In this document: positions 3,323 through 60,581 of the stretch, one piece after another
Numbering within the stretch: position 1 is the stretch's first letter
Layout of the letters: each line of letters starts with the position of its first letter
Virus record (IMG/VR): IMGVR_UViG_3300020380_000001
Location: 186,001-250,000 of that record
Direction: 5' to 3' (one strand)
Length of the DNA stretch: 64,000 bases
Program-made: the position numbers and the translations under genes
The notes under the pieces: model-generated
What the model was told of the DNA's origin: nothing
Database searches by the model: none
What the model saw: only the letters and a program-made list of their open reading frames with translations

Positions 3323-3397
3323 TGGTAGAGACACCGTGGGTCGAACACGGAGCACCAGCCTTATGAGGGCCGGGCGAATACCAGCCATTCTGTCTCT
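3323..3397 (-). tRNA. atypical tRNA with CAT anticodon (Met or Ile2)
   Basis: AGAGACA/TGTCTCT acceptor, CTCATAA loop, canonical T arm, CCA; no connector before the D stem; 6-bp anticodon stem. Confidence 0.8.
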
Positions 3398-3500: not shown

Positions 3501-3597
3501 TGGTACCAGGTACGGGATTCGAACCCGCAGGGTCATTATTACAGACCGCGACAAACACTTTAATGATGCCGCGCCTTCCCATTCGGCGCAACCTAGT
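3501..3597 (-). ncRNA. tRNA-like RNA with degenerate anticodon arm (apparent TTA anticodon)
   Basis: 7-bp acceptor, CGCC/GGCG D stem, canonical T arm, A-CCA; weak GGCAT/GTGTT stem around CATTAAA; extra GGTC/GACC arm. Confidence 0.65.
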
Positions 3598-3895: not shown

Positions 3896-3970
3896 TGGTA
3901 GGTTAGGTGAGTATCGAACTCACTACAACTGATTTGTAAGAACAGCGCCTCACCTGTCGGCCTCTAACCT
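3896..3970 (-). tRNA. trnV: tRNA-Val(TAC)
   Basis: AGGTTAG/CTAACCT acceptor, CTTACAA loop with one stem mismatch, CCA. Confidence 0.8.
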
Positions 3971-5053: not shown

Positions 5054-5132
5054 TGGTTGCAAGGGCGGGATTTGAACCCGCGTCCGCTAGGGTTATGAGC
5101 CCTGCCATCTGCCAGACTGATTGTACCTTACT
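5054..5132 (-). tRNA. initiator-like tRNA-Met(CAT)
   Basis: 1:72 mismatch, GGG-CTCATAA-CCC, canonical T arm, CCA. Confidence 0.85.
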
Positions 5133-7523: not shown

Positions 7524-7547
7524 TGGAAGGGGTCGTTACCAACCCCT
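7524..7547 (-). ncRNA. CCA-terminated microhelix
   Basis: AGGGGTT-GGTAAC-GACCCCT-T-CCA; no U-tract on either strand. Confidence 0.35.
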
Positions 7548-7561
7548 CAATAAAACAATTC

Positions 7562-8053
7562 TTAAAAGTGCGGGTTTTTGTCATTGTGAACACCGCGTGC
7601 AAGCGTCCAAATGCCTGCTCGTTTATATGTAGCAGTGTTGCCTTTACGCCAAAATACTGTACCGTCGCTTGTTGTAACTTTCTTCATAGTTTTAGAAATC
7701 TTGACAATTGTACCGCACGGATACCAGTCACCGTTAAAACCGTAACTTACTACGTCACCAATCTTTGGCATGCGCTCTACTGCATGATCATCGTGACGCT
7801 CTACAGCAATATAAGTATCACCGGTTTCTTCACTCAACTGCTCAGCGATTCGTTGCGCAATAAAGCTAGAGCCACAATAATTAAGGGTAACAAACTGGGC
7901 CATTATTTCTTTGTAGAAGTTCGGCGCTTTTTCTTCATCGCCACCTGCCATCTTTAGCGCAGTTTCACGGACTTCTTCAGCCCATGCTTCAGTGTAGTCT
8001 TCGTTACGATCAATAATGTTACCAGTTTTTAAATCTACTCTATAATGTATCAT
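7562..8053 (-). CDS. hypothetical early protein
   Basis: 163-aa ORF behind a repeated promoter cassette. Confidence 0.75.
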   Translation of the reverse strand: MIHYRVDLKTGNIIDRNEDYTEAWAEEVRETALKMAGGDEEKAPNFYKEIMAQFVTLNYCGSSFIAQRIAEQLSEETGDTYIAVERHDDHAVERMPKIGDVVSYGFNGDWYPCGTIVKISKTMKKVTTSDGTVFWRKGNTATYKRAGIWTLARGVHNDKNPHF

Positions 8054-8141
8054 AATTTGCTACCTTGTGTTTGTTTAATCAACCTACACAGACATAATAG
8101 CAGAATGACATTCAAGTACAAGACTTGTTTGAAAATAATTT
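8051..8141 (-). repeat. promoter-leader cassette, copy 1
   Basis: About 90 bp, near-identical to 9506..9600 and similar to 24741..24843 (+). Confidence 0.85.
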
Positions 8142-8153
8142 AAAATATATTTT

Positions 8154-8239
8154 GCACAGCGGACGGGTTTCGAACCCGCAATGCGATATTCGCGCTGCCT
8201 TGAAAGGGCAGTGACTTTACCAGTTTGTCCACCGCTGTG
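8154..8239 (-). tRNA. trnE: tRNA-Glu(TTC) with long variable arm, no encoded CCA
   Basis: CTGCC-CTTTCAA-GGCAG arm; 15-nt V region CGCGAATATCGCATT. Confidence 0.85.
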
Positions 8240-8310
8240 GAAAATATACTTATTCTGGGCAAAAATAAAGCGACTTAATAGCCGCTTTATCATGGCATTA
8301 AGGTTTGTTA

Positions 8311-9021
8311 CTATGCGCGTCTACGAACAGCGATTCCTAGTACTGCTAAAAGCGCAAGTGCTAATGAACCTGGCTCCGGTACCGCTGTTACACCACCTAA
8401 CTGTAAATCATATGAACGCTGCATTAGCCCAGTATCAGGCGATGCAATATTACCGCGCACTTGGATGGCTCCGATGTTTGTGAAGTCAGTGTTACTAAAT
8501 TCACGCGAAAGGAAAAACGCATCACGTCCTGGGCGATTAACACCGGGTATCGGTAACTCAACAGTTTCAGCAGTTCCGTTAGGACCTGACCAAAACGTTA
8601 CGTCAAACCAAGCATTCAAATCTGATTCAATAATCGTTGTAATAAATTTTATCGGGTTGCCAATTGCAGTTAAGTCAAGTCCGCCTAAGCCGAATGGATT
8701 AATTGCATTTGATCCGTCAACGCCGTCCCATTGAATGGTAAACATTGATTCGTTACCTGCGCCTGAACTAAAGAAAAAGTTATCAGCCGCTACGTTTACA
8801 GAGGCGCCTTGGTTGAACTCGTCAACAACGCTTGTTATTTCTAAATCTCGTTCTCCGCCGATCATAGAACCCAATACAGAGCTAAACAAAGTTTGGCCTT
8901 GCATTACTACCATTGGTCCTTGGTCATCAGAAAAGTCATCAATCGTTATCATACCTGCGTTGGCTGAGGTAGTAATACCCATGGCCAATACAGCGCCTAA
9001 CAATAGAGATTTCATTTTCAT
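8311..9021 (-). CDS. PEP-CTERM sorting-domain surface protein
   Basis: Sec signal peptide ending SANA; C-terminal VPEPGS + hydrophobic TM + RRRA. Confidence 0.93.
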   Translation of the reverse strand: MKMKSLLLGAVLAMGITTSANAGMITIDDFSDDQGPMVVMQGQTLFSSVLGSMIGGERDLEITSVVDEFNQGASVNVAADNFFFSSGAGNESMFTIQWDGVDGSNAINPFGLGGLDLTAIGNPIKFITTIIESDLNAWFDVTFWSGPNGTAETVELPIPGVNRPGRDAFFLSREFSNTDFTNIGAIQVRGNIASPDTGLMQRSYDLQLGGVTAVPEPGSLALALLAVLGIAVRRRA

Positions 9022-9068
9022 ATAAATGATCCTTTTAAAGTTATCCAGTTGCTTTTAGCAACACATAC

Positions 9069-9096
9069 ACTATACATTACTTTTTTACAAGGTCAA
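9069..9096 (-). promoter_or_regulatory. sigma70-like promoter for the PEP-CTERM gene
   Basis: TTGACC-16-TATAGT. Confidence 0.65.
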
Positions 9097-9229
9097 GAAG
9101 TTTCTTTAATTCGTAAAACAGTATTTAATAGGCATGTATGAATAACACACGATTTTGACCTCTTATTCACAAAAAGCCAAAATCGTGTGTTATGCGATGA
9201 CCATAATGATCACCGCGCTACACTACTAA

Positions 9230-9508
9230 TTATTTTTGCAAATCGTAATATTCGTACTCATAACGACCACCTTCGATCTCGCCCCACTGCTCCCAGCCGT
9301 TCTTTGAAACATGCATTGTGTTCGCGGCGTGCTCAGGAGTAATGATAAAACGTACATCAAAACCAGCAGCGTGTGCCTCAGCTTTTACACTTTCAAAGTC
9401 TTCAGCGCTGTGTGCAGCACCGTGCCATACGTTTTCAGTTGCGCCTACCATTTCTTCAGCGCTGTTCCAGTTCGCTACTACAAAACTTGTTGCTTTACGA
9501 TTGTTCAT
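9230..9508 (-). CDS. hypothetical early protein
   Basis: 92-aa ORF behind the repeated cassette. Confidence 0.7.
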   Translation of the reverse strand: MNNRKATSFVVANWNSAEEMVGATENVWHGAAHSAEDFESVKAEAHAAGFDVRFIITPEHAANTMHVSKNGWEQWGEIEGGRYEYEYYDLQK

Positions 9509-9685: not shown

Positions 9686-9770
9686 TGGTGGGTTGGGTGG
9701 GATTCGAACCCACGAAGCATTACGCGCTAGATTAAAAGTCTAGTATCTTTAACCACTCGATCACCAACCC
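9686..9770 (-). tRNA. trnK: tRNA-Lys(TTT) on a class II (Tyr-like) body
   Basis: CTAGA-CTTTTAA-TCTAG arm; 13-nt V region CGCGTAATGCTTC; A73-CCA. Confidence 0.88.
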
Positions 9771-9936: not shown

Positions 9937-10488
9937 TTAATATAACGAGTCTTCTACGATTTCAAACAAGTCATTATACATAGCTGAAGCCATTGCATTA
10001 AACTCGTCGTAAGCGCCATCAGCAAAAAAATCACTATACAACATATGTGCATCGCCTTTATTGTCACGTACTGACTTTGACACGTACTGTAACGAGCGAG
10101 GCTTAAAGTGCGACATCTTTTGCAATCTAGGTTCCGGCGGGAAAGCACGCATTTCAATATCAATTGAGTCATCGCCTTCCTGATAAAACACTAACATTTT
10201 AAGAACTGTATTCGCGTTCCAGTTAGTTTTTATCGGCTTAAACTTGATAGTGAAGCCTTCTTTACCAGCTTGAGGAACATCGTCGCCTTGTAGTACGTCG
10301 ACACCCATATCAGCAATCTCATCTAACCAAGTGTTCATACCACTAACGATTTGTTCACGGAACTTGCTGTATTGTTCTCTGAATCCGGCAGCGTCGCTTT
10401 CCATTAATCTGAAAACCTTTTCCATACCGGAATTTTGTCCTGTTTTTTTCCCTTCAAGGATTTTGTTAACTCGATTTCGGTCAGCCAT
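9937..10488 (-). CDS. protein with variant shared N-terminal peptide
   Basis: MADRNRVNKILEG...MEKVFRLMES; ATAAATAG upstream. Confidence 0.75.
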   Translation of the reverse strand: MADRNRVNKILEGKKTGQNSGMEKVFRLMESDAAGFREQYSKFREQIVSGMNTWLDEIADMGVDVLQGDDVPQAGKEGFTIKFKPIKTNWNANTVLKMLVFYQEGDDSIDIEMRAFPPEPRLQKMSHFKPRSLQYVSKSVRDNKGDAHMLYSDFFADGAYDEFNAMASAMYNDLFEIVEDSLY

Positions 10489-10674: not shown

Positions 10675-10750
10675 TGGTGGAGTATACCAGACTCGAACTG
10701 GTCAGGCTATCATCTTGCAAGGATGATCCGGGTGCCCATGCCCATACCCC
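10675..10750 (-). tRNA. trnA: tRNA-Ala(TGC), atypical D region
   Basis: G3:U70; ATCATC-CTTGCAA-GATGAT 6-bp arm; CCA. Confidence 0.88.
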
Positions 10751-10758
10751 ATTAAACT

Positions 10759-10833
10759 TGGTGCCGAGTGGTGGTACCGCCCCACCCTCTAAGGATTTTC
10801 AATCCATCGCTAATCTGTCTCAGCTAACTCGGC
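10759..10833 (-). tRNA. trnF: tRNA-Phe(GAA), non-canonical T and D loops
   Basis: GCCGAGT/ACTCGGC acceptor; TTGAAAA loop; T-loop GGCGGTA. Confidence 0.85.
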
Positions 10834-14712: not shown

Positions 14713-17700
14713 TTAGCCTCTATAATATTTCGGGTGCGCAATCTCTACCTGGAACTGAGGGTCTTGGTCAAAGAACTTAGTAAAGTAGTTATCCGGAATT
14801 GGCTTTTCAAACGTTGGTATCAAGTCATTGCCATCCTGCGGGATAACATCAGACTCAATTACAGGCCAATCAAACACAAACGTATCTGCACGGAATAAAA
14901 CTGTACTTTCTACTACAGGCATCACCCCGTAGCGCTGTATACCAGACTCAACCTTATCAAGCACCTGCGGCGCGTATTCAATAAGACCGTTCTCTGAAAC
15001 AATTCGTATAGAGTCACCGTATCTTATATCGTCTAGTGCTTCAGTAGGCCAATCAACCACGTCTACTTTTGCGTTGCCTATATCAATCCTTACAAGTACA
15101 CCATCTACCGGATCATGTTCTTGTGTTTGTATAGGATGCATCTGCTTGAGTGTTTCAGGCAGCCCGGTGATAGTTGACGTCGACGTTATTTTAACAATGT
15201 CAGGCACATAATAATGTGAATCAACTGCCAAGACATCAGCAGCATCTTCGAACCTTGCAGGTATCATGTCAGCGACAAACACATACGGACGACGGCCATC
15301 ATCGTCTATCATTTTGCCAACTACCGGTACATACTTGTCGTGCTCAGCAAGTACTGATCCAACCAAGTGACGTGCCCAGGGTTCTGCCTTCAGGTAATCA
15401 TCCACAGAAGCCGGTGCGACATCGTCTACTACATACGACACAGCCGACGCCGTGTGTACTGATTGTTTGTCGGTAATATAAGCCTTAACAACCCTGTCGA
15501 AAGATACGCCACTAATATCAAATACCGGCTTAACATCTAAATGATCAGGAACATCGTCTCTGTAGCCTGTTTTTATTGGTCCGGTGTCTACATGTATCTT
15601 AAACGGGTTGTACAGTAGGGCAATATTGTCGTGGTGGTACAGTGACTCAACAGGATATTGCTTGTCAGTAAGCACCCATTTATCGTCGAATATAGCCTCT
15701 GTCAAGCCCGGCACAGTTGTAACTTCGTGATCTATCTCATACAACGTGTGTTGGTATTGTTGATCTACCACATAGAACGTACCCTGAACATTGTCTGGCA
15801 CAGGCAATGTAGGATGAGTAAATGCCGCTTTCCCGTTTACAAGATAGTTATACTCAAACATCTTAATATTAAGGTGTTCCGGCATATGCTCCCAACCGTT
15901 ATAGTCAGGGTCATAGCCAAATAGAGTATCTATATCGCGTCGTATGTACTGATCCCAGATCGGCACAGATTCTGTCCACGGTGTACCTGCATACGGGTTC
16001 CATGCTTCTAGCGGGGTGCCAGGCATAGACACATGGGGATCAGTTACGTGGCCTACTAATAAGGGCTCTGCTTCGTATGCGTCAGATGTCAGGAAGTCGA
16101 AACCCCACTCAAGGATAGCAGGATCCGAGGCTCTATTGTTGATATCACCGTCACCAAATTCTGTGCTTAAAGTGTAACGCGTATTACGTGAAAGTTCCGG
16201 ACTAAACACCGCGCGATGTGCTGTGTTAGGTGTAGTCGGACGAACTCTGTCAAGTACTACCCCGTCACTGTCTTTTAGGACTAGCCACTTAATGTCATTC
16301 GGGTTGGTGAACACAGTGTTGCCTTTAGCGAACAACACGGTCAATCTTACTTCACGATCCTCGGTTTCAAATTCAATGTCTTCCGGGTACACACTAAACC
16401 CGTCAGGATCATCTAGCGAGTTCAATATAATGCCTGCGCCTGTTGACGTAGAGTAAAGCCTATTTGCATTTAATTCAGGAAGTGCGTCGTTGCCGTCGCT
16501 GTACTTGGCATCTTTAGTCCAACCTTTGAATTGGTGATCTAGCGTGTTAACCGGCGATGCTGCGTTACCACTTGCTGCGGCTAGTAATTCAGGCACTGTT
16601 AACGCCCAGTTATAAGCTGTGATATCCTGTACAACTAGGTTCGGGTTTATATTTGCCAAGCTACTCACCACACCCAATGACAGATGCTGCGTGCGCATCA
16701 TGCCCTGGTCAAGCGGCAATGTTGTTTCTTGGATGCAACGTTCGTTTACATACACTCGTATTAGGCCTCTATCATATACGATACTTATAAGAACTCGCTC
16801 GTTATACTTGGTTGCACTCCCCATCGCTGTGTGAATTCTATCAGCTGTATTCAGCTTTAACGAACCCTTATAAACGTCTTTTACGAAAGCACCGTCTGAC
16901 GAAACACCGTCACGCCATATGCCAACCGTTCTCGGGAATATGTCGTGTTCAGACGACACTCCCCACATAATGTCATGCTGTGCAAAAACGCCTATACCAC
17001 CGTCTTGCGCTGGGTTATCGGTTTCTTGCCATGCATTAGTCCTGATACTCAAAGTCCATTGATCGAATGTCTGCGGCGCTAGAGCACACGTATCTATACT
17101 ATACCATCCCGTAGGGTACATACCGTACGTGCCGTCAGGGAATTGGTACTTCGCAGGATCACCGTTATTACGTGAATCCAAGTCAGTGCGCTTAAAGCGT
17201 AATACATCATAATACGTGTTGTCCGGTGTATCGAAAGACACCATCATTGAGCGGGCTTTTTCCCTAGTATCCTGTCCAACTAACGGATGATTAATTACGA
17301 ATCGTCTTATAGTAATTTCAGTACTTGGTATCTGGCGCGGGTTATAAAACTCTAGCTCATATAAACCACTGTAAGGCACCTCTATATCATACCATTTAGA
17401 CTCTGTTTCAATAGCAGGGTCATATGCTGTGTCCGAGATAATTTTATCAGTTGTCAAATTACGTAGACGCAACGACATGTAATCAGTATTACCGTGTGTT
17501 GACTCTATATAAATACGCACTTTAGCAGGGCCGCTTGCTTGGAACTCTACGGTTTCGCCATGCGCAAAAAGTAAATCAGTTCTATCTGATTCAAAGTCAT
17601 ACGTGGCGTTTGTTAGATCACTAGTTGCCGATACTGCCGCTGAACGCACTGCTACATTAGATATACTAAGCAACTCACCACTTGGTGTAGTGGCGTCTGG

Positions 17701-20700
17701 TGTTCCGATAAAACTATCAAGAATATCCACCGCGTCTGCGCTGCCCATTTGGACAAACATCATGTCAGTGCCGTCAATCATTCTATCAAAAACGATAAAA
17801 TTAGATATCTTACCAGCATAATCGTACGACGACACAGGGAATATAATCGAATCCGGTGTCAGATACAATGCTTCGGGATTTACGTAGTCGCTAATCACAA
17901 GCCTGTTACCTACGTAAATTTTAATGTTATCGCCGCGTACTGAATACGTTAGCCATAATTCACCGTTAGCGTCTAAGTCACCGTCTTTAACCACTAGTAA
18001 ATCGTTACTAGCAACGCGCAAGTCAGTTCCGCCGAACAGTCTATTAGACCGTGCGTTAGTGGCGTCATTTGAAAACTTAGCAACCCACTCTTCTAGTTCT
18101 GAACCAGTGCCTTCTATATCAAACTTAGTTTGATTAGACTTGCCGACTTGCATAAAGTCGCGCACGTTGACAGTCGCGCCGACTGCTGTGTCTAGCTTTA
18201 ATACCACCGTATATTCGTCTAGTACATCGGTTAAGCCAAATGCAGACATCGCCATACTAGATCTATTAGCTAGCTCGCCAGGCGTCCAAGGGTATACTGA
18301 TCCATCTAGTGTCTTGGTACCGGCGGGCACTCCCAACCCAGTAGTTAAGTCAGTAACATATAACGACGAAGCTTCATTGTTAGCTAGATGCATAACACGT
18401 CGAGTAACACCTTTACCGGCGCCTAGAGACTCAATAACCATATCGTTTGTTTCATATACCAATATACTTTCTAATCTAGAATCGACATCGTAATCAAAGT
18501 CTTTAGACATGGAGAACTCATATGTACCGGCAGGCAGTAACACTGGCATTAACCAAGTGTCTCCACCTACATGCTTGAATGTAGGGTCAGCTTTGTCTGC
18601 CGTTGTCCATACTTCTCCCGTTGCTATATTCTCTATGTTAACAGGCGCGTGATACTCGTCTTCTGCGTTCCACACAATTTGCATATACGACGGCTCGTCT
18701 AATTTATACCGCTGTGTGCCGAATTTAAGTCTTGCATCAGTCTCCAGAACAGCGCCGTGGAATTGGGTTGATCGCTCTATTCCGAACTCGCAGCGCCACA
18801 CGCGTTCCATATTGAACCATCTACGACCGACAAAGTTATAATCACCCCAAGAACCAGTCGCATTAGAACGTGTTAGATTTTTCATGTAGCCGTCGTAAAC
18901 AGGGTTCATGGCGTACCCGTTAAGACCGTCTTCTAAAACGTCTCCTGCAGGGATTCTATAAAACTGTACACCGCGCGGGACACCAGTACGAGGATGGCTG
19001 AAGTCATCATAAAAGCCAGCACGAGCTCGAATAGCGTGAACCTCAACAGGGTCATCTGTTTTAAATTCAATAACGAAGTACCCAGGATATAAGTACTGCT
19101 CTTGATAATATGCGCGTCTACTCAACATAGCAGCGTTAAGACTGTCAGTTGGCTCCATAAATCCGTCATGTATATTTGGTCCTACCCAAGGACCTGTTTT
19201 CAAGTAATTATTAGAATCGCGCGGTATGGAACTGCCGCCAGCCGCTAATGGGTTGCCTTTATATCCATATGCCAACGGACTTCCTAAAAAGTTAGGAAAC
19301 TTCCCAGGTAGTTTCTGTGTAAATCCTGTCGAATTAGGGTCATCTAAGGCCGATTCAATTAAACTAATGGTATACGGAATAGGGTCGCCGTTCTTATCAT
19401 AGAACGTAATCTCTCCCAAGACCGCGCCCGAGTTATAAAAGTTCCACCAATAGTGCCCTGCATCGTTGGTCTCTTCCCACGTAGGCTTAAGTTCAGGTAC
19501 GTCATTAACAGACGGGATAGTGGGCATCGGGCCAGGGTTAGGATTAGTAGACGGATTAGCATCGTAGGCGTCTTTTGCAATCTGCCATTCGGCTTGTAAC
19601 CGTGCTTCCTCTGCCTGTCTGCGATTCTCCCATTCAGCAGCATGCCATGCGTTGGCTAACGATCTCGCACGCTGCACCGCAGACGATGACCCGTTACGAG
19701 TAACGTCCTCTACGTAAAACGGTTTCTCTACGCCGATAACCATGTACTTTGCGGTGAACACATTTGATTCGTTATAAGACAGTCTATTCCTACGGATCTG
19801 ATTTCTGTACAGTTCGTTATCAGCGTCATACGGCCATCCGGAATCTAACTTGTTTACATCATCACCAAGTACGCTATCGCCCTGCGTGGCTTTCCTAGTA
19901 TTATACCAGTTGTTTACCATGCCGATATACTGGAAGTTGCCGCCTTGTGTATCCTGCCCGCCTGTTACTCGTTTAGCTGTGACGATCTTACCGTTCTCCG
20001 TAACAGAAACAAAGTTAAAGCCGCCGTCGTGGTGTAGTGCACCGAGGCGTTCTAGATAAAAAGCATCGCTCAATATAGTGGGATTAGCAAACGTAAAGCG
20101 CAACCCATCTGTTATGTCTATTTCACGAGTAACAGTGTAAAAGCCTTCACCGCCGCCGTTGTATAAGACATCTTCGGCAGAGTACCCAGCGTATTGATCT
20201 GAAACCCATCCGTCACTTAAACTCACAGTAAGGTTATCAAACACACTAACCTGCGAACCGGACGTAACTAACGTACCGTAATCAAATACGTTGCCCTGCG
20301 CGTCGAGGAATCCCCAAGATCCGATAAATGCATCCGACGGGCTACTTGATGTTGCGAAGCCAGTTACTGCGATATTCTTTATAGCGACAACGTTATCGGC
20401 AGGTTCAAAATACGACACAGATCTACCGGAGAAATATTCAAACGGTGCGTACAAAAGGTCTTCTTTAGCCATGCGCAGACGTGCGCCCCAACCCGGCGGA
20501 AGTGTAACCGCAGGAGCCAAAAGTCCGGTAGTCAAGGCCCCGTCTTCTAGTATAGTACTGTATCCAGAATCATAGCCGTTTTTGGCTATCAATACCTGGT
20601 TGGTAGAGGCGTCTACTAAAAACTGTATGACGTCGCCTTTATAAAAGCCAGGAACATCAAATGTCGTGTTAGCTACTGAGCCGTTACTATAGACAGAGTT

Positions 20701-21123
20701 AGTTCGTGAATCATAACCTACACTCACTAAGCCTTGATCAAACTGCTTGTCGCCTAATGCGTAAACGTTTATTCTACGATCATTAAGGATGCCTATATCA
20801 GCTAGGCCAACACGCGCTGACCATTCATCGACTGAGTTTTCCGGGTAGGCTTCTGCGTCAGTAATTTCTATTTCAAAATAGAACAGTTTATTGGTTTTAA
20901 AGTCAAGCACTGTATCAGCTAGAACCATGCCGAAGCTTTGTTCAATTAACTCTAACTGAGGTGCACTACCGTAACTCACATACGGATCAGAGTATGTGTT
21001 CATTACAGACTCTTGGTCTTCCGATATAACAAATCTAGACTGCTTGGCATGCCTTGGTACTGAATCAGGATTAAAGCCAGGCTTTAGTGTAGAAGTGCTA
21101 TGCGGTATTTTTAACTGTGCCAT
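14713..21123 (-). CDS. giant virion structural/tail protein with N-terminal SPRY-like and LamG-like domains
   Basis: 2136 aa; YFEIEI..VGL...SVGY...GDVIQFLVD...KNG SPRY pattern; IKIYVGNRLV and IRVYVNERCI LamG-like strands; CTAAATAT upstream. Confidence 0.75.
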   Translation of the reverse strand: MAQLKIPHSTSTLKPGFNPDSVPRHAKQSRFVISEDQESVMNTYSDPYVSYGSAPQLELIEQSFGMVLADTVLDFKTNKLFYFEIEITDAEAYPENSVDEWSARVGLADIGILNDRRINVYALGDKQFDQGLVSVGYDSRTNSVYSNGSVANTTFDVPGFYKGDVIQFLVDASTNQVLIAKNGYDSGYSTILEDGALTTGLLAPAVTLPPGWGARLRMAKEDLLYAPFEYFSGRSVSYFEPADNVVAIKNIAVTGFATSSSPSDAFIGSWGFLDAQGNVFDYGTLVTSGSQVSVFDNLTVSLSDGWVSDQYAGYSAEDVLYNGGGEGFYTVTREIDITDGLRFTFANPTILSDAFYLERLGALHHDGGFNFVSVTENGKIVTAKRVTGGQDTQGGNFQYIGMVNNWYNTRKATQGDSVLGDDVNKLDSGWPYDADNELYRNQIRRNRLSYNESNVFTAKYMVIGVEKPFYVEDVTRNGSSSAVQRARSLANAWHAAEWENRRQAEEARLQAEWQIAKDAYDANPSTNPNPGPMPTIPSVNDVPELKPTWEETNDAGHYWWNFYNSGAVLGEITFYDKNGDPIPYTISLIESALDDPNSTGFTQKLPGKFPNFLGSPLAYGYKGNPLAAGGSSIPRDSNNYLKTGPWVGPNIHDGFMEPTDSLNAAMLSRRAYYQEQYLYPGYFVIEFKTDDPVEVHAIRARAGFYDDFSHPRTGVPRGVQFYRIPAGDVLEDGLNGYAMNPVYDGYMKNLTRSNATGSWGDYNFVGRRWFNMERVWRCEFGIERSTQFHGAVLETDARLKFGTQRYKLDEPSYMQIVWNAEDEYHAPVNIENIATGEVWTTADKADPTFKHVGGDTWLMPVLLPAGTYEFSMSKDFDYDVDSRLESILVYETNDMVIESLGAGKGVTRRVMHLANNEASSLYVTDLTTGLGVPAGTKTLDGSVYPWTPGELANRSSMAMSAFGLTDVLDEYTVVLKLDTAVGATVNVRDFMQVGKSNQTKFDIEGTGSELEEWVAKFSNDATNARSNRLFGGTDLRVASNDLLVVKDGDLDANGELWLTYSVRGDNIKIYVGNRLVISDYVNPEALYLTPDSIIFPVSSYDYAGKISNFIVFDRMIDGTDMMFVQMGSADAVDILDSFIGTPDATTPSGELLSISNVAVRSAAVSATSDLTNATYDFESDRTDLLFAHGETVEFQASGPAKVRIYIESTHGNTDYMSLRLRNLTTDKIISDTAYDPAIETESKWYDIEVPYSGLYELEFYNPRQIPSTEITIRRFVINHPLVGQDTREKARSMMVSFDTPDNTYYDVLRFKRTDLDSRNNGDPAKYQFPDGTYGMYPTGWYSIDTCALAPQTFDQWTLSIRTNAWQETDNPAQDGGIGVFAQHDIMWGVSSEHDIFPRTVGIWRDGVSSDGAFVKDVYKGSLKLNTADRIHTAMGSATKYNERVLISIVYDRGLIRVYVNERCIQETTLPLDQGMMRTQHLSLGVVSSLANINPNLVVQDITAYNWALTVPELLAAASGNAASPVNTLDHQFKGWTKDAKYSDGNDALPELNANRLYSTSTGAGIILNSLDDPDGFSVYPEDIEFETEDREVRLTVLFAKGNTVFTNPNDIKWLVLKDSDGVVLDRVRPTTPNTAHRAVFSPELSRNTRYTLSTEFGDGDINNRASDPAILEWGFDFLTSDAYEAEPLLVGHVTDPHVSMPGTPLEAWNPYAGTPWTESVPIWDQYIRRDIDTLFGYDPDYNGWEHMPEHLNIKMFEYNYLVNGKAAFTHPTLPVPDNVQGTFYVVDQQYQHTLYEIDHEVTTVPGLTEAIFDDKWVLTDKQYPVESLYHHDNIALLYNPFKIHVDTGPIKTGYRDDVPDHLDVKPVFDISGVSFDRVVKAYITDKQSVHTASAVSYVVDDVAPASVDDYLKAEPWARHLVGSVLAEHDKYVPVVGKMIDDDGRRPYVFVADMIPARFEDAADVLAVDSHYYVPDIVKITSTSTITGLPETLKQMHPIQTQEHDPVDGVLVRIDIGNAKVDVVDWPTEALDDIRYGDSIRIVSENGLIEYAPQVLDKVESGIQRYGVMPVVESTVLFRADTFVFDWPVIESDVIPQDGNDLIPTFEKPIPDNYFTKFFDQDPQFQVEIAHPKYYRG

Positions 21124-22707: not shown

Positions 22708-23988
22708 TCACAGGACTAGTGTTTCTAAGTTCTTCTTAGTAGACACTTCAGGGTCATCGTATAGCTGCGAACTGCGGTTATCGCCAGCTACAACATATTC
22801 GATTTCCTGTCCTACTTGCCTGCGTATTATTGTATGGGTTGCGCTGGTGTCAAAATCAACAACATCACTTAATATTAATGTAGGCGACAGTATTGTCGTT
22901 TCGCCCCCAGCGTCATTAGTGTCACTAGCTACGCCCATCTGTTCGTATCCATTAAAGCCAAAACCCCATAGCTCACCACTATCATATAACACCAATGTAT
23001 GGCTTGAGCCGCATTTTACTTTTACTGGGATACCAGTAGCGCCAATGTTAACCAATACAGGCGTGTCAGTGGCATCATGTGTTAAGAAGGTAGGTGCTGT
23101 TATGTCACCTAGCTGTCCGTAGTAATTGTGGCCGAGCGCATAAAGATCACCGTCTTTGATATAGACAGTATGTGCACCGCCGCATGCTATCTCGTCAACA
23201 CCAGTATCTAGTAATACAGGGTCAGCGTTTTGTGATGCAGTGCCAGTCGGGTATACCGTGCCTACTTGTCCGTAGCGATTATAACCTAATACCATTAAAT
23301 CGCCGGCATTGGTGATATAAGCGCCGTGGTAATAGCCTAGGCTTACTTTGTCCGGGTTGACGTCTATAATGTTAGTCTGCATAGTAAAGACAGCACGGTA
23401 AGATGAACCATAAAAACCCACTTGGCCTGATTCGTTGGCGCCAGCTGTCCATACGTTACCGTCAAAATCCATTACCCATGAATAATAGCCGCCTGCCCAA
23501 GCACGCATAACATTTCGTTTTAGAGGGCCTCCTGTTTCTTTAGTAGTAACCGTATTGTAACGAGAGTCAGAGTAACCAAGTTGCCCTTGTCTGTTACTTC
23601 CCATTACATACAACGCGCCGTTACTAGTCAACAAAAGCGCATGTTTAACACCGGTGGATATGTCTAATACTTTTTGTGCTTTGCCGGCGAAGTAGTTGTT
23701 ATCCCTGTCTAAGAGACCCCAACTAGCGTAGTCTGGATTATCTTCAGTGCCGGTGTCCGTAATCCCTGCTTCTTCGTTTTCGTTGGCGTACTGTAATCCA
23801 AGTTGCCCGTACGTGTTGTCACCGCTTACATGTAGTACGCCTGTTTCGGGGTCTAGTATGATACTGAATGCGCGGCTTACACCGTAAAGGCTAATTATGT
23901 CAGTAAGCTTTGCGTTATTATTAGCAGGGGATCCTATTAACACGCCACCAGAAAATACTTGGGAGCCTGTTAGGGTGATTAAAGCCAT
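22708..23988 (-). CDS. RCC1-repeat beta-propeller protein
   Basis: Repeated G..H.......G.LY..G.N.YGQLG units. Confidence 0.9.
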   Translation of the reverse strand: MALITLTGSQVFSGGVLIGSPANNNAKLTDIISLYGVSRAFSIILDPETGVLHVSGDNTYGQLGLQYANENEEAGITDTGTEDNPDYASWGLLDRDNNYFAGKAQKVLDISTGVKHALLLTSNGALYVMGSNRQGQLGYSDSRYNTVTTKETGGPLKRNVMRAWAGGYYSWVMDFDGNVWTAGANESGQVGFYGSSYRAVFTMQTNIIDVNPDKVSLGYYHGAYITNAGDLMVLGYNRYGQVGTVYPTGTASQNADPVLLDTGVDEIACGGAHTVYIKDGDLYALGHNYYGQLGDITAPTFLTHDATDTPVLVNIGATGIPVKVKCGSSHTLVLYDSGELWGFGFNGYEQMGVASDTNDAGGETTILSPTLILSDVVDFDTSATHTIIRRQVGQEIEYVVAGDNRSSQLYDDPEVSTKKNLETLVL

Positions 23989-58325: not shown

Positions 58326-60581
58326 TTATTCTGCGCTGGCTTCTTCTTGCTTGGCGCGCTGTGCTTTGCGATCTAGCGTTACGTTAACCACTAGTTCGTT
58401 ATTAGCAACTTCTAAACGTACAATGCCACCTTCAGTCAACTTACCATACAAGACTTCCTTAGCAATTGGCTTGCGGACCGCAGTCTTAAACAAGCGCTTA
58501 AGAGGACGGGCTCCGTACTTGTCGTCAATCCCGTTGTCACGCAACCAACGCGTAGCGTCAGGTGTTACGGATACTTGGATATTCTTAGTACTCAAGTCTT
58601 GATTTAACTCAGTAATGTACGTCTTGAGGATTCGGTTAATACTAACCTCGTCAAGCGGTGCAAACACATGAACATCATCAACACGGTTAATCAGTTCCGG
58701 CTTAAAGAAGCGTTTCACTTCCGCGTCAATTTCCGATGCCATGTTTGCGCTGCCAGCTGCAAAGCCTATACGACTGCCGCTCGCTTTTGCTGCGCCAGGG
58801 TTACCAGTATAAAAGATAACGGTATTGGAGAAGTCTGCGGCTACGCCTGACGACGACGTAAGTTTGCCGTGATCGTGTATCTGTAAGAATAAATCATATA
58901 CGCTTCGGTGCGCTTTTTCAGATTCATCCATCAGTATTACACAAACTGGGTTTTCAGATACTTCCGTAACCAACTTACCATTCTTATAACGACCTTCACC
59001 GTGACCCTTGTAGCCAGGAGGTGCGCCAATCAGTAACGCGTCTGAGTGCTCAGCTGAATACTCACTCATATCATAGCGCAGTAACGGCACGCCCCATTCT
59101 TCCGCAAGTACTTTCACCAAGTGTGTTTTACCAGTACCTGTGATACCAGCAATAATACCACCGTAAATAGGACCTTCGGAATTGTCAAGCCCAGCTTTGC
59201 GCGTTTCAATAGCTTCAACTACCGTGTCAATAACATCGTCGTGTCCAAACACACGATCCTTAATACGGGCAGCAAGCGTCGACATACTGTCGCTGTCGTT
59301 CGCTGTTAAGTCTTTTTCAGGAATGCCGGTAGTCAAACTTAGTGCGCGTGTGATGTTTTCATCGTTTACTTCGTCTTGTCCTTTAATCTTAGCGTTAATC
59401 ATCGCTAAATCAAGTAGGTCAAAACTTCTGTCCGGGTTGTGCTTTTGCTGCACATATTTGGTAGCCAAATCAACCAGTTTCGGTAAGTCTGCCATATTAA
59501 ACGACACGTTATGGAAGTCTTCGTACGAGAACAGGCTCTGTGCAAGTATACGCACAGTTTCATCACGCGATGGTTCAGGCACATCAACTAACGCAAAGCG
59601 GCGCACAAGTGCTCTATCACTTTCAATTTGTTCGTAATACTCAGCGTTAGTAGTAGCGCCGATTACTTTAATTTCACCGTTTGCTAGTTTAGGCTTAAGC
59701 ATGTTGCCCAAGTCAAGCGCTGAATCTTTAGTTTGTCCAGCTGACATTGCGGAGTGCATCTCGTCAATAAACAAGATAACTTTGTCCTTAGAACACAGCT
59801 CGTCAATAATTGACTTAATACGTTCTTCAGCATCACCGCGGAACTTAGTACCTGCCATCAGGGCAGCAACATCAAGTGAATAAATTTCGTAGTCTTTTAG
59901 TGAATCCGGGATTTCGCCGTCTACAATTCGTTTAGCTAGGCCTTCAACAATTGCTGTTTTACCAACACCGGCTTCACCTGTCAAAATTGCGTTTGACTTT
60001 TTGCGGCGTCCCAGTACATGTACTAGTTGATCAATAACATCGTCGCGCCCAACAAGCGGATCAATTTTCTCAGCTTGTTCGGTTAAGTTTACACAGTATG
60101 TGCCTAAAGGATCAGTTACGTTTGAACCAGTACCAGCGCCAGATTGAAGAGCAGGCTCTAGGATTTCTAAAATCTTTTCACGTGTAATGCCGTGCTTTTT
60201 AAGATATGCTGCCGAGTGCGAGCGCTCTTCGGTAACCATCATTAATACTAGCGACACAAGTGTCAAATCAGAATTGCCTGAAATTGCGTCTTGTGCTGAT
60301 GCACGACGGATAAGTTCAATTAAGCGCTTGGATTCTTTGGGTTCAATGTCAGTGCCAGTCCATGGTGAACGTAGCGACTCACTTGACAAATAAGTTTCAA
60401 CATCAGTGATAAGGCCGTTAAGCGTGCCTTTACAGCGCGTAACTAAATCAGTGAATGTTTTTTCTTGTGTAAGGGATAAGAGCAAATGCTCGGTAAGTAG
60501 GTATTCGTGATAGCGGCTAACCGCCTCGTTTGTAGCGCGTTCCATAACACGCTTGATGAACTGTAAGTCTTTATCAGCCAT
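58326..60581 (-). CDS. clpA: ClpA-like AAA+ unfoldase
   Basis: N-domain ([11 protein letters not shown]); D1 GEAGVGKT and LFIDE; D2 GITGTGKT and LMDESEK; IGF ClpP-docking loop; no ClpB M-domain. Confidence 0.92.

What the first reader, a model, noticed from the sequence alone, without database searches (positions are those of the whole stretch)
8311..9021. Phage-encoded PEP-CTERM surface protein under an early promoter
Seen: a complete signal peptide, a beta-rich body and a textbook VPEP-TM-RRR tail, with its own sigma70 promoter and downstream terminator hairpin (about 8267-8292), inside the tRNA array. Established: PEP-CTERM proteins are processed by bacterial exosortases and displayed with the exopolysaccharide layer. 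No exosortase is present in this window. Inference: a captured host gene that uses the host exosortase to remodel the infected cell surface, for superinfection exclusion, receptor masking or aggregation. It also points to an exosortase-positive proteobacterial host.
Basis: partly seen in the sequence, partly recalled or inferred. Interest (0 to 1): 0.68.

Follow-up and report, generated by a model that had tools for sequence, protein, structure and literature searches.

The report
Phage-carried PEP-CTERM surface protein cassette
A 306.5 kb marine jumbo phage carries a self-contained gene for a secreted sugar-binding-like protein whose tail is the sorting tag normally cut by a bacterial exosortase; the phage has no exosortase, so it probably relies on its host's sorting machinery to alter the infected cell's surface.

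Summary
Window 8311-9021 (-) encodes a 236-aa protein with a Sec signal peptide, a confidently modelled beta-sandwich and a C-terminal VPEP / hydrophobic helix / RRR tail that passes Pfam PEP-CTERM. It has its own TTGACC-16-TATAGT promoter, a Shine-Dalgarno site and a terminator hairpin, and it lies between tRNA genes.

The contig is a complete 306.5 kb jumbo myovirus with no exosortase. It is not a chimera: the gene has phage-like GC and recurs in many marine assemblies.

Homologues of 40-94% identity form one clade. Every context I checked is a marine phage, each with its own promoter and terminator, which is the classic moron layout. Selection is purifying (dN/dS about 0.11-0.15).

Bacterial relatives (about 30-40% identity) sit beside exopolysaccharide genes; one such genome has exosortase A. 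The body has a carbohydrate-binding-module-like fold (Z 10-11.5).

Not shown:
- the host
- processing by an exosortase
- early timing of expression
- any exclusion or aggregation phenotype

A motif scan found PEP-CTERM tails on 53 further viral contigs, so the phenomenon is wider than this phage. I found no paper describing it. My call is a new variant of a known kind, with moderate to high interest.

The parts
9069..9096 (-). Sigma-70-type promoter: -35 TTGACC (9096-9091), 16-nt spacer, -10 TATAGT (9074-9069)
   Evidence: 10 of 12 consensus positions. An equivalent TTGAC-N16/17-TAnnnT lies upstream of all 7 homologues aligned. The pattern occurs 4 times in the window, all on the coding strand, against 1.4 expected.
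9030..9034 (-). Shine-Dalgarno AAGGA, 8 nt before the ATG
   Evidence: Sequence. AAGG is invariant in the upstream alignment.
8311..9021 (-). Coding sequence, 236 aa plus stop (P0001): the PEP-CTERM protein
   Evidence: dN/dS is 0.11 against the 94%-identical orthologue in L002.
8956..9021 (-). Sec signal peptide, aa 1-22 (MKMKSLLLGAVLAMGITTSANA, predicted cleavage after ANA)
   Evidence: Read from the sequence. A22 is invariant in 23 homologues. The N-terminal helix has low pLDDT in the model. No signal-peptide predictor was available.
8386..8955 (-). Mature body, aa 23-212: jelly-roll beta-sandwich with a carbohydrate-binding-module-like fold
   Evidence: AlphaFold2 pLDDT is mostly above 90. 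VIA Z is 10-11.5 to the N-terminal CBM-like domain of GH50 agarases, CBM30, CBM11, CBM29, CBM4 and CIA30/NDUFAF1. The top ESM Atlas match is a bacterial PEP-CTERM cluster, TM 0.79.
8314..8385 (-). PEP-CTERM sorting domain, aa 213-236: AVPEP + GSLALALLAVLGIAV + RRRA
   Evidence: PF07589 scores 25.1 bits against a 20.7 cut-off, aa 213-235, and 29.4 bits in six frames. A213, V214 and P217 are invariant and R234 nearly invariant in the phage clade.
8264..8291 (-). Intrinsic terminator hairpin (12-bp stem, 4-nt loop, U-run) ending the cassette
   Evidence: -16.5 kcal/mol, z = -3.6. Every homologue has its own terminator of a different sequence.
9146..9189 (-). Long hairpin (20 pairs) ending the upstream gene 9230-9508 and insulating the cassette on its 5' side
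   Evidence: It is conserved in L002.
8154..8238 (-). tRNA-Glu (UUC), first gene downstream of the cassette
9686..9770 (-). tRNA-Lys (UUU), nearest tRNA upstream

Best explanation
The gene is a phage 'moron': a self-contained unit with a promoter, one gene and a terminator, carried in the tRNA-rich accessory region of an uncultured marine jumbo myovirus.

Its product belongs to a bacterial family of small surface proteins. These have an N-terminal carbohydrate-binding-module-like beta-sandwich followed by a C-terminal sorting tag, here PEP-CTERM.

Most likely mechanism:
1. Host RNA polymerase with its housekeeping sigma factor transcribes the gene during infection.
2. The Sec pathway exports the protein and signal peptidase removes residues 1-22.
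3. The C-terminal helix and RRR cluster hold the protein in the inner membrane.
4. The host's own exosortase recognises the VPEP motif, removes the tail and passes the roughly 190-aa domain to the cell surface or exopolysaccharide layer.
5. There the domain binds a glycan and changes the surface of the infected cell.

The likeliest benefit is keeping further phages, or the phage's own progeny, off infected cells. Changing how infected cells stick together is the alternative.

Shown: the anatomy, the phage location, the conservation, the purifying selection, the fold, the lack of a phage exosortase, and the exopolysaccharide/exosortase A setting of the bacterial relatives.

Inferred: every step of sorting, the ligand, the timing and the benefit.
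For: Identity and anatomy.

Real phage, not a chimera:
- The record is 306.5 kb with terminal repeats and 100% estimated completeness.
- It has a portal, tail sheath, rIIA, family B DNA polymerase and ribonucleotide reductase.
- Its nearest cultured relatives are PA5oct, Atu_ph07 and Rak2-like jumbo myoviruses.
- Gene GC is 44.2% against 43.4% for the genome, and GC3 matches the neighbours.
- The same arrangement occurs in a second 310 kb viral contig at 94% protein identity.
- The stretch is held by marine runs from 10 studies.

Conservation:
- 22 homologues of 40-76% identity were found, several on 300-335 kb contigs.
- All six contexts I looked at are phage-like.
- The homologues form one clade with 98/98 support.
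- dN/dS is 0.11-0.15 for unsaturated pairs.
- The protein is better conserved (52-74%) than the few neighbouring genes these phages share (29-55%).

Cassette: each homologue has its own sigma-70-type promoter, ribosome site and terminator.

Dependence on a host factor:
- Neither phage genome searched encodes an exosortase or archaeosortase.
- A213, V214 and P217 of the motif are nevertheless invariant.

Family biology:
- Bacterial relatives lie next to Wza/Wzz/tyrosine-kinase and sugar-nucleotide genes and a second PEP-CTERM gene.
- One such genome has exosortase A (262.7 bits against a 208 cut-off) with its associated O-glycosylation ligase.
- There is a weak, partial match to the flocculation protein PepA model.
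- PEP-CTERM proteins and exosortases are needed for floc formation, and PEP-CTERM proteins fall in the exoproteome of an exosortase mutant (PMC9850573, PMC12188702).

Surface-binding role of the domain:
- The fold is CBM-like.
- The same domain heads a 639-aa adhesin-like protein with SdrD-type and DUF11 repeats and a different C-terminal tag.

Expression: metatranscriptome contigs from 4 runs in 3 studies cover the gene.
Against: - The host is unknown, so an exosortase in the host is assumed, not shown.
- In 9 of 22 phage-clade sequences the motif departs from PEP (VSEP, VAEP, VSAP, GAP) while the helix and basic cluster stay. That could mean relaxed dependence on an exosortase, or a different sortase specificity.
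- TIGR02595 is just under its cut-off.
- RNA-library contigs cannot prove transcription. They run about 60-85 nt upstream of the predicted start, and one crosses the terminator, so they do not confirm this promoter or terminator.
- No carbohydrate-binding family matches by sequence, and no ligand is known.
- Nothing tests exclusion or aggregation.
Confidence: 0.6

Rival explanations
1. Exosortase-independent membrane protein. The tail acts only as a C-terminal membrane anchor. The beta-sandwich stays in the periplasm, tethered to the inner membrane, where it could block DNA entry by other phages or bind envelope precursors, in the manner of small membrane-bound exclusion proteins of T-even phages.
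For: - The hydrophobic helix and basic cluster are kept in every homologue, whereas the P and E of the PEP motif vary in 9 of 22 sequences, with E replaced by A in three separate lineages.
- No exosortase is encoded by the phage.
- The host is unknown.
Against: - A213, V214 and P217, just before the helix, are invariant in the phage clade. A plain anchor would not need that.
- 13 of 22 sequences keep the exact VPEP.
- Bacterial relatives are PEP-CTERM proteins beside exopolysaccharide genes, one in a genome with exosortase A.
- The domain is also found at the tip of adhesin-like surface proteins.
Confidence: 0.22
2. Virion or adsorption accessory. The CBM-like domain is a receptor-binding or decoration module that ends up on the phage particle.
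For: Foldseek against viral models returns mostly tail-fibre tips and uncharacterised phage proteins at E 1e-6 to 1e-4. The jelly-roll CBM fold is common in phage receptor-binding proteins.
Against: - A cleavable Sec signal peptide plus a C-terminal membrane anchor is not how tailed-phage virion proteins are made.
- The gene lies in the tRNA/accessory region, far from the structural genes.
- It has a -35/-10 promoter rather than sitting in a late operon.
- TM-scores are low (0.3-0.46).
Confidence: 0.05
3. Artefact or relic: a piece of host DNA joined to the phage by mis-assembly, or a decaying passenger gene with no function.
For: None found. The idea rests only on a bacterial-type sorting tag being unexpected in a lytic phage.
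Against: - The same locus appears in independent assemblies and a second complete viral contig.
- The composition matches the phage.
- The frame is intact in all homologues and dN/dS is 0.11-0.15.
- The promoter and terminator are kept in every context.
Confidence: 0.02

Closest known systems
PEP-CTERM / exosortase protein-sorting system of Gram-negative bacteria (PF07589, TIGR02595; exosortase A and relatives)
   Same: It has an N-terminal signal peptide, a divergent body and a C-terminal PEP motif followed by a hydrophobic helix and an Arg cluster. It scores over the Pfam cut-off. Its bacterial relatives sit beside exopolysaccharide genes, one in a genome with exosortase A.
   Different: It is encoded by a lytic-type jumbo phage that has no exosortase, no exopolysaccharide locus and only this one PEP-CTERM gene. 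It would therefore have to be sorted in trans by the host. It is driven by a sigma-70-type promoter; the characterised pepA genes are RpoN-dependent (PMC9850573).
PepA, the flocculation-associated PEP-CTERM protein of Zoogloea and Aquincola (NCBIfam NF033554)
   Same: It is a small secreted PEP-CTERM protein of about 230-260 aa. There is a partial profile match beyond the tail (aa 120-235, 26.9 bits; 27 of 38 family members match, best E 1.2e-11). The named bacterial relatives found are Ferribacterium, Accumulibacter and Thiobacillaceae.
   Different: The score is far below the 80-bit equivalog cut-off, so it is not PepA. It has a different N-terminal half, with an IDDFS-x-QGP and GGERD signature. 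The setting is marine phage, not sludge bacterium.
Phage morons and small envelope proteins that change the infected cell surface (for example lipoprotein Llp of T5, Imm/Sp of T4, Cor of phi80-like phages); stated from general knowledge, not tested here
   Same: It is a single accessory gene with its own promoter and terminator, inserted between unrelated phage genes. The product is exported to the envelope. Exclusion of other phages is a plausible role.
   Different: Those proteins use lipoprotein or plain membrane targeting. None is known to me to carry a PEP-CTERM tag or a CBM-like fold. Exclusion is not shown here.
Prophage-encoded sortase substrates of Gram-positive bacteria (LPXTG surface proteins such as SasX on a staphylococcal prophage); stated from general knowledge
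   Same: The logic is the same: a phage gene supplies a protein with a C-terminal sorting tag, and the host's sorting enzyme displays it.
   Different: The enzyme family, the tag and the envelope differ. Those are lysogenic conversion genes, whereas this phage has no tyrosine integrase and looks lytic.
Carbohydrate-binding modules with a jelly-roll fold (CBM11, CBM30, CBM29, CBM4/22, the N-terminal domain of GH50 agarases) and CIA30/NDUFAF1
   Same: The fold matches at Z 10-11.5, with about 135-150 aligned residues and rmsd 3.4-3.9 A. ESM Atlas neighbours include CIA30 and CBM11-type clusters.
   Different: Identity is only 5-14%. There is no Pfam or PDB sequence match. The ligand is unknown. 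A shared fold does not show sugar binding.
PEP-CTERM domain protein HOG10 of the IME1 elements of Dehalococcoides (bioRxiv 10.64898/2026.09.15.751708)
   Same: It is a mobile, virus-like element reported to carry a protein with a PEP-CTERM domain and a signal peptide.
   Different: That is a small integrative element proposed to form filamentous or budding particles in a different phylum. It is not a tailed jumbo phage. Homology between the two proteins was not tested.

Membership tests
PEP-CTERM sorting domain (PF07589 / TIGR02595) | Profile score at or above the curated cut-off | tested here: met
   PF07589 scores 25.1 bits against 20.7 and 29.4 bits in the six-frame search. TIGR02595 scores 15.3 against 16, marginally below.
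PEP-CTERM sorting domain (PF07589 / TIGR02595) | Located at the extreme C-terminus: Pro-Glu-Pro motif, then a hydrophobic helix, then a cluster of basic residues, then the stop | tested here: met
   V214-P-E-P217, GSLALALLAVLGIAV, RRRA, stop. The helix at 219-235 appears in the model.
PEP-CTERM sorting domain (PF07589 / TIGR02595) | N-terminal signal peptide on the same protein | tested here: met
   The MKMK / hydrophobic core / ANA|G pattern is read from the sequence and conserved in 23 homologues. No dedicated predictor was available.
PEP-CTERM / exosortase system | An exosortase encoded in the same genome | tested here: not met
   No PF09721 or TIGR04178 match in the 306.5 kb phage genome, and no PF09721 match in the related 310 kb phage. 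The enzyme would have to be the host's.
PEP-CTERM / exosortase system | An exosortase present in the cell where the protein is made (the host) | not testable with these tools
   The host is unknown. The only indications are kinship to phages of Pseudomonadota and marine origin.
PEP-CTERM / exosortase system | The tail is removed and the protein is exported in an exosortase-dependent way | not testable with these tools
   This needs an experiment. A complex prediction with a heterologous exosortase A gave no verdict.
Flocculation protein PepA (NF033554, equivalog) | Full-length profile match at or above 80 bits | tested here: not met
   26.9 bits, covering only aa 120-235 against profile positions 160-258.
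Phage moron (autonomous accessory cassette) | One gene flanked by its own promoter and its own terminator, inserted between unrelated genes, present in some related phages at differing sites | tested here: met
   Promoter. Terminators. Flanks differ between L002, L003, L015, L017, L019 and L020. The signals are predicted, not mapped.
Carbohydrate-binding module families (CBM11/30/29/4) | Sequence membership in a CAZy/Pfam CBM family | tested here: not met
   There is no Pfam hit other than the tail and no PDB sequence match with the family profile. The resemblance is in fold only.
Carbohydrate-binding module families (CBM11/30/29/4) | Demonstrated glycan binding | not testable with these tools
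   This needs the purified domain (aa 23-212) and glycan arrays or host polysaccharide.

The most novel reading that the evidence does not exclude
Phage-encoded PEP-CTERM proteins are a widespread, so far undescribed class of morons. Phages of exosortase-bearing bacteria supply a tagged glycan-binding protein that the host exosortase displays in the exopolysaccharide layer of the infected cell or lysogen. This reprograms adsorption of other phages or cell-cell aggregation. The marine jumbo-phage family found here, and about 20 unrelated PEP-CTERM protein clusters on other viral contigs, would be independent captures of the same trick.
Probability: 0.3. Interest if true: 0.78.

Novelty: new variant of a known kind. 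Interest (0 to 1): 0.6.

Why it matters
PEP-CTERM/exosortase sorting is common in environmental Gram-negative bacteria, but few of its substrates have a known function.

A substrate family kept under purifying selection by abundant marine jumbo phages that lack the enzyme would be a natural case of a virus feeding a protein into this pathway in trans. That gives three things:
- A small, portable reporter substrate for studying exosortase specificity.
- A host-range clue, because the host should carry an exosortase.
- A candidate mechanism by which phages alter the exopolysaccharide coat, phage adsorption or aggregation of marine bacteria.

The wider scan suggests the same idea recurs in many unrelated phages. 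I found no paper that reports it.

Tried and rejected
- DNA and protein searches of 50,697 deposited phage genomes found no match to the locus or the protein. The family is therefore absent from cultured phages in that collection, and no cultured model exists.
- PHROGs gave no family for the protein or for most neighbours. Pfam on ten neighbours gave only YqeY, a weak HNH and a weak peptidase hit.
- Two alignments were too diverse for the genome-contig scan.
- The scan with phage-type motifs found no bacterial genome.
- The scan with a bacterial alignment named only three full-length relatives; the rest were tail-only hits.
- The class-wide genome search returned hits but no taxon names.
- The host could not be identified. 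Run names were coded, and no spacer or prophage evidence was available.
- The variant tails (VSAP, VSEP, VAEP) were scanned for other C-terminal sorting domains. None reached a cut-off.
- The family profile found no sequence relative in the PDB. Language-model neighbours were all below 0.8 and are leads only.
This is no evidence either way.
- The RNA-library contigs neither confirm nor refute the predicted start site.
- No other genetic code was needed.

Full report
WHAT IS THERE

The ORF at window 8311-9021 on the minus strand is real: 236 codons, ATG start, no internal stop. Its product (P0001) starts with a typical Sec signal peptide, MKMK, then a hydrophobic core, then SANA|G. It ends with AVPEP, GSLALALLAVLGIAV, RRRA and the stop.

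Pfam's PEP-CTERM model scores 25.1 bits against a cut-off of 20.7. The six-frame search of the whole genome gives 29.4 bits and finds this as the only PEP-CTERM tail in the genome. The NCBIfam version of the domain is marginally under its cut-off, at 15.3 against 16.

AlphaFold2, run with 38 homologues, gives a confident model (pLDDT 88.8, pTM 0.81). It has thirteen strands between residues 25 and 215 and a helix at 219-235.

EXPRESSION SIGNALS

- TTGACC, 16 nt, TATAGT lies at 9096-9069.
- AAGGA sits 8 nt before the ATG.
- A 12-bp hairpin followed by a U-run lies at 8291-8264. It folds at -16.5 kcal/mol with z = -3.6.

A single promoter-like match means little, since 8 were found in 2.5 kb against 5.9 expected. 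The comparative evidence is stronger. All seven homologous loci I aligned have TTGAC-N16/17-TAnnnT and AAGGAT at the same distance, even where the rest of the upstream sequence is unrelated. Each locus is also followed by a strong terminator of a different sequence. The gene therefore travels as promoter + gene + terminator, which is the classic moron layout.

A further hairpin at 9189-9146 ends the upstream gene.

The cassette lies between tRNA-Lys (9686-9770) and tRNA-Glu (8154-8238), in an array of at least 17 tRNA genes on the same strand. Homologues in more distant phages also sit among tRNA genes.

THE GENOME IS A PHAGE AND THE LOCUS IS NOT A CHIMERA

The window is bases 186001-250000 of a 306,500-bp viral record with terminal repeats, estimated complete. 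The record encodes a portal, tail sheath, rIIA, family B DNA polymerase and ribonucleotide reductase, plus tail-fibre-like and ClpA-like proteins.

Its nearest cultured relatives are jumbo myoviruses of Pseudomonadota:
- portal: 48% identical to Pseudomonas phage PA5oct, 46% to Agrobacterium phage Atu_ph07, and 42-45% to Rak2-like phages
- DNA polymerase: 37-41%

No tyrosine integrase was found.

The gene's GC (44.2%) and GC3 (0.35) match the genome (43.4%) and its neighbours. A second complete viral contig of 310 kb has the same gene order, with 94% protein identity. The stretch is held by marine or seawater metagenome runs from 10 studies.

A CONSERVED PHAGE FAMILY

The word-based protein search returned 22 homologues of 38-76% identity, several on contigs of 300-335 kb. 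It also returned 24 more distant proteins of 26-38% identity. I checked six contexts among the closer group (P0002, P0005, P0019, P0020, P0022 and the IMG/VR contig). All are phage-like, and several come from Tara Oceans or other marine samples. The remaining homologues sit on contigs too short to judge.

In a maximum-likelihood tree these 22 sequences form one clade (98/98 support) on a long stem. That fits a single old capture followed by spread among phages.

Selection is purifying. dN/dS is 0.11 for window against L002 and 0.15 for L015 against L017; most deeper pairs are saturated. The PEP-CTERM protein is 52-74% identical between phages whose few other shared genes in this region are 29-55% identical. 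In L019 it is the only shared gene.

Within the tail, A213, V214 and P217 are invariant and R234 nearly so.

BACTERIAL RELATIVES AND THE NATURE OF THE BODY

The distant homologues are bacterial. Two of them (P0032, P0024) lie in a conserved locus: a LolA-like protein, an ABC ATPase, DUF1302, the PEP-CTERM gene, ThiF and two MacB-type permeases. The locus sits beside Wza/Wzz/tyrosine-kinase genes or sugar-nucleotide genes, and beside a second PEP-CTERM gene. The genome holding P0032 encodes exosortase A (262.7 bits against a 208 cut-off), fused to EpsI, next to the exosortase-A-associated O-glycosylation ligase.

Named genomes with full-length relatives are Ferribacterium, Accumulibacter and a Thiobacillaceae MAG. 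No genome among 185,579 species carries the phage-type motifs. The donor is therefore not identified, and the transfer is not recent.

The body matches no Pfam family and no PDB sequence. Its fold is the jelly-roll of carbohydrate-binding modules, with Z 10-11.5 to the N-terminal domain of GH50 agarases, CBM30, CBM11, CBM29, CBM4 and CIA30/NDUFAF1. The best ESM Atlas neighbour is a bacterial PEP-CTERM cluster (TM 0.79).

Because the word search only sees proteins of similar length, I also looked at six-frame genome hits. The same domain heads a 639-aa protein with DUF11 and SdrD-type repeats and a different C-terminal tag. P0033 ends in an IPTL-CTERM-like tail that scores below its cut-off. 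So this is a surface 'head' domain that bacteria combine with different anchors.

There is a weak, partial profile match to the flocculation protein PepA, far below the family cut-off.

HOW IT MOST LIKELY WORKS

Published work holds that PEP-CTERM proteins cross the inner membrane by Sec and stay anchored by the tail until an exosortase processes them. They then reach the cell surface or exopolysaccharide, where they are needed for floc formation, biofilm or motility (PMC9850573, PMC12188702).

The phage has no exosortase yet keeps the motif under constraint. The simplest reading is that the host enzyme processes the phage protein.

[quoted passage not shown] This fits a -35/-10 promoter being used by the host enzyme. 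'Early' remains an inference.

The benefit is not shown. The options are masking or occupying a surface glycan to keep other phages or progeny off infected cells, or changing aggregation.

The main rival is that the tail is just a membrane anchor and the protein acts in the periplasm. In favour of that rival, 9 of 22 phage-clade sequences have VSEP, VAEP, VSAP or GAP instead of VPEP, with E changed to A in three lineages. None of these variants matches another known sorting tag.

EXPRESSION

Contigs assembled from four metatranscriptome runs in three studies cover the gene. Examples are X19 at 8528-8679 with 0 differences and 8659-9142 with 6 differences, and X17 at 7543-9148.

Contigs cannot show transcription, strand, ends or level, and DNA carry-over is possible. 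They also extend upstream of the predicted start, and one crosses the terminator. This is presence in RNA libraries and nothing more.

WIDER CONTEXT

A scan of the viral-contig collection for DNA encoding VPEPG[S/T]LAL found 57 contigs. Of these, 53 have a hydrophobic stretch, a basic cluster and a stop right after the motif. The 47 proteins of at least 100 aa fall into about 20 clusters, and only one belongs to the present family.

Two of the contigs were checked with PHROGs:
- In one, the PEP-CTERM gene lies between terminase/portal genes and an amidase gene.
- In the other, it lies between a virion-protein-like gene and a tail sheath gene.

PEP-CTERM morons therefore seem to recur in unrelated phages, mostly of higher GC. 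I did not check the other contigs for host flanks.

Full-text searches found no paper describing PEP-CTERM proteins of tailed phages. The nearest is a PEP-CTERM domain protein on IME1 elements of Dehalococcoides.

VERDICT

The protein is a new family with a known kind of sorting tag, in an unusual carrier, and depends on a host enzyme it does not encode. I rate it a new variant of a known kind, interest 0.6.

Noticed in passing
L104-L160 (IMG/VR viral contigs); for example L147:9640-10479(+) and L140:4212-5003(+): 53 viral contigs encode proteins ending in VPEPG[S/T]LAL + hydrophobic stretch + basic cluster + stop. The proteins fall into about 20 unrelated clusters on contigs of GC 0.47-0.68. 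In L147 the gene lies between terminase/portal and amidase genes. In L140 it lies between a virion-protein-like gene and a tail sheath gene. PEP-CTERM morons seem to recur in many phages.
   Followed up: partly
window 3501-3597 (-): ARAGORN calls a 97-nt 'tRNA-Stop' with anticodon UUA between two tRNA-Ser genes. Rfam's tRNA model does not reach its threshold there. In the related phage (L002:11107-11201) the same slot is called tRNA-Pro(CGG), 95 nt. This could be a suppressor-like or degenerate long-arm tRNA.
   Followed up: partly
window 3899-3970, 5057-5132, 10762-10833 (-): Rfam finds three tRNA genes that ARAGORN did not list, and misses three that ARAGORN lists (3323-3397, 3501-3597, 10675-10750). 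The array therefore holds about 20 tRNA genes.
   Followed up: no
window 9937-10488 (-): This 183-aa ORF between tRNA-Asn and tRNA-Asp is absent from the 94%-related phage, where the two tRNAs are adjacent (L002:5027-5216). No RNA-library contig covered it. It looks like a strain-specific insertion in the tRNA array.
   Followed up: partly
L008-L013 (bacterial loci): Bacterial homologues sit in a conserved block: a LolA-like TP_0789 protein, an ABC ATPase, DUF1302, the PEP-CTERM gene(s), ThiF and two MacB/FtsX permeases, next to exopolysaccharide export genes. This may be a dedicated export or modification system for this PEP-CTERM family.
   Followed up: no
L040:1441-3360 (+); P0033, P0035: The same N-terminal domain (IDDFS-x-QGP, GGERD, WDG) heads longer adhesin-like proteins with DUF11 and SdrD-type repeats. 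L040 and P0033 end in IPTL- or XrtH-type tails (weak matches) instead of PEP-CTERM, so this is a 'choice-of-anchor' style domain with no Pfam model.
   Followed up: partly
window 9863 joined to 8201 (run X17, table 5c): One RNA-library contig joins a point in tRNA-Asp to a point in tRNA-Glu with 25 other letters between. It could be a mis-join across similar tRNA segments, or a strain lacking the 1.6 kb that holds tRNA-Lys, ORF 9230-9508 and the PEP-CTERM cassette.
   Followed up: no
P0014 (homologue from a 1 kb contig): Its C-terminus departs from the family right after VP and reads CLLYTSPSPRDRTRSRMPSSA. From memory this looks like translated sequencing adaptor at a contig end. I left it out of the tree.
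   Followed up: no
window 58326-60581 (-), 22708-23988 (-), 14713-21123 (-): The window also encodes a ClpA/Lon-like ATPase (phrog_4871, 37-42% identical to those of PA5oct, Atu_ph07 and Rak2-like phages), an RCC1-repeat protein and a 2136-aa ORF.
   Followed up: partly
L020:7116-7751 (-): In the phage context of P0020, the PEP-CTERM gene is the only gene on its strand in that stretch. It lies next to a sulfotransferase (PF03567), which may be another surface-glycan-related accessory gene.
   Followed up: no
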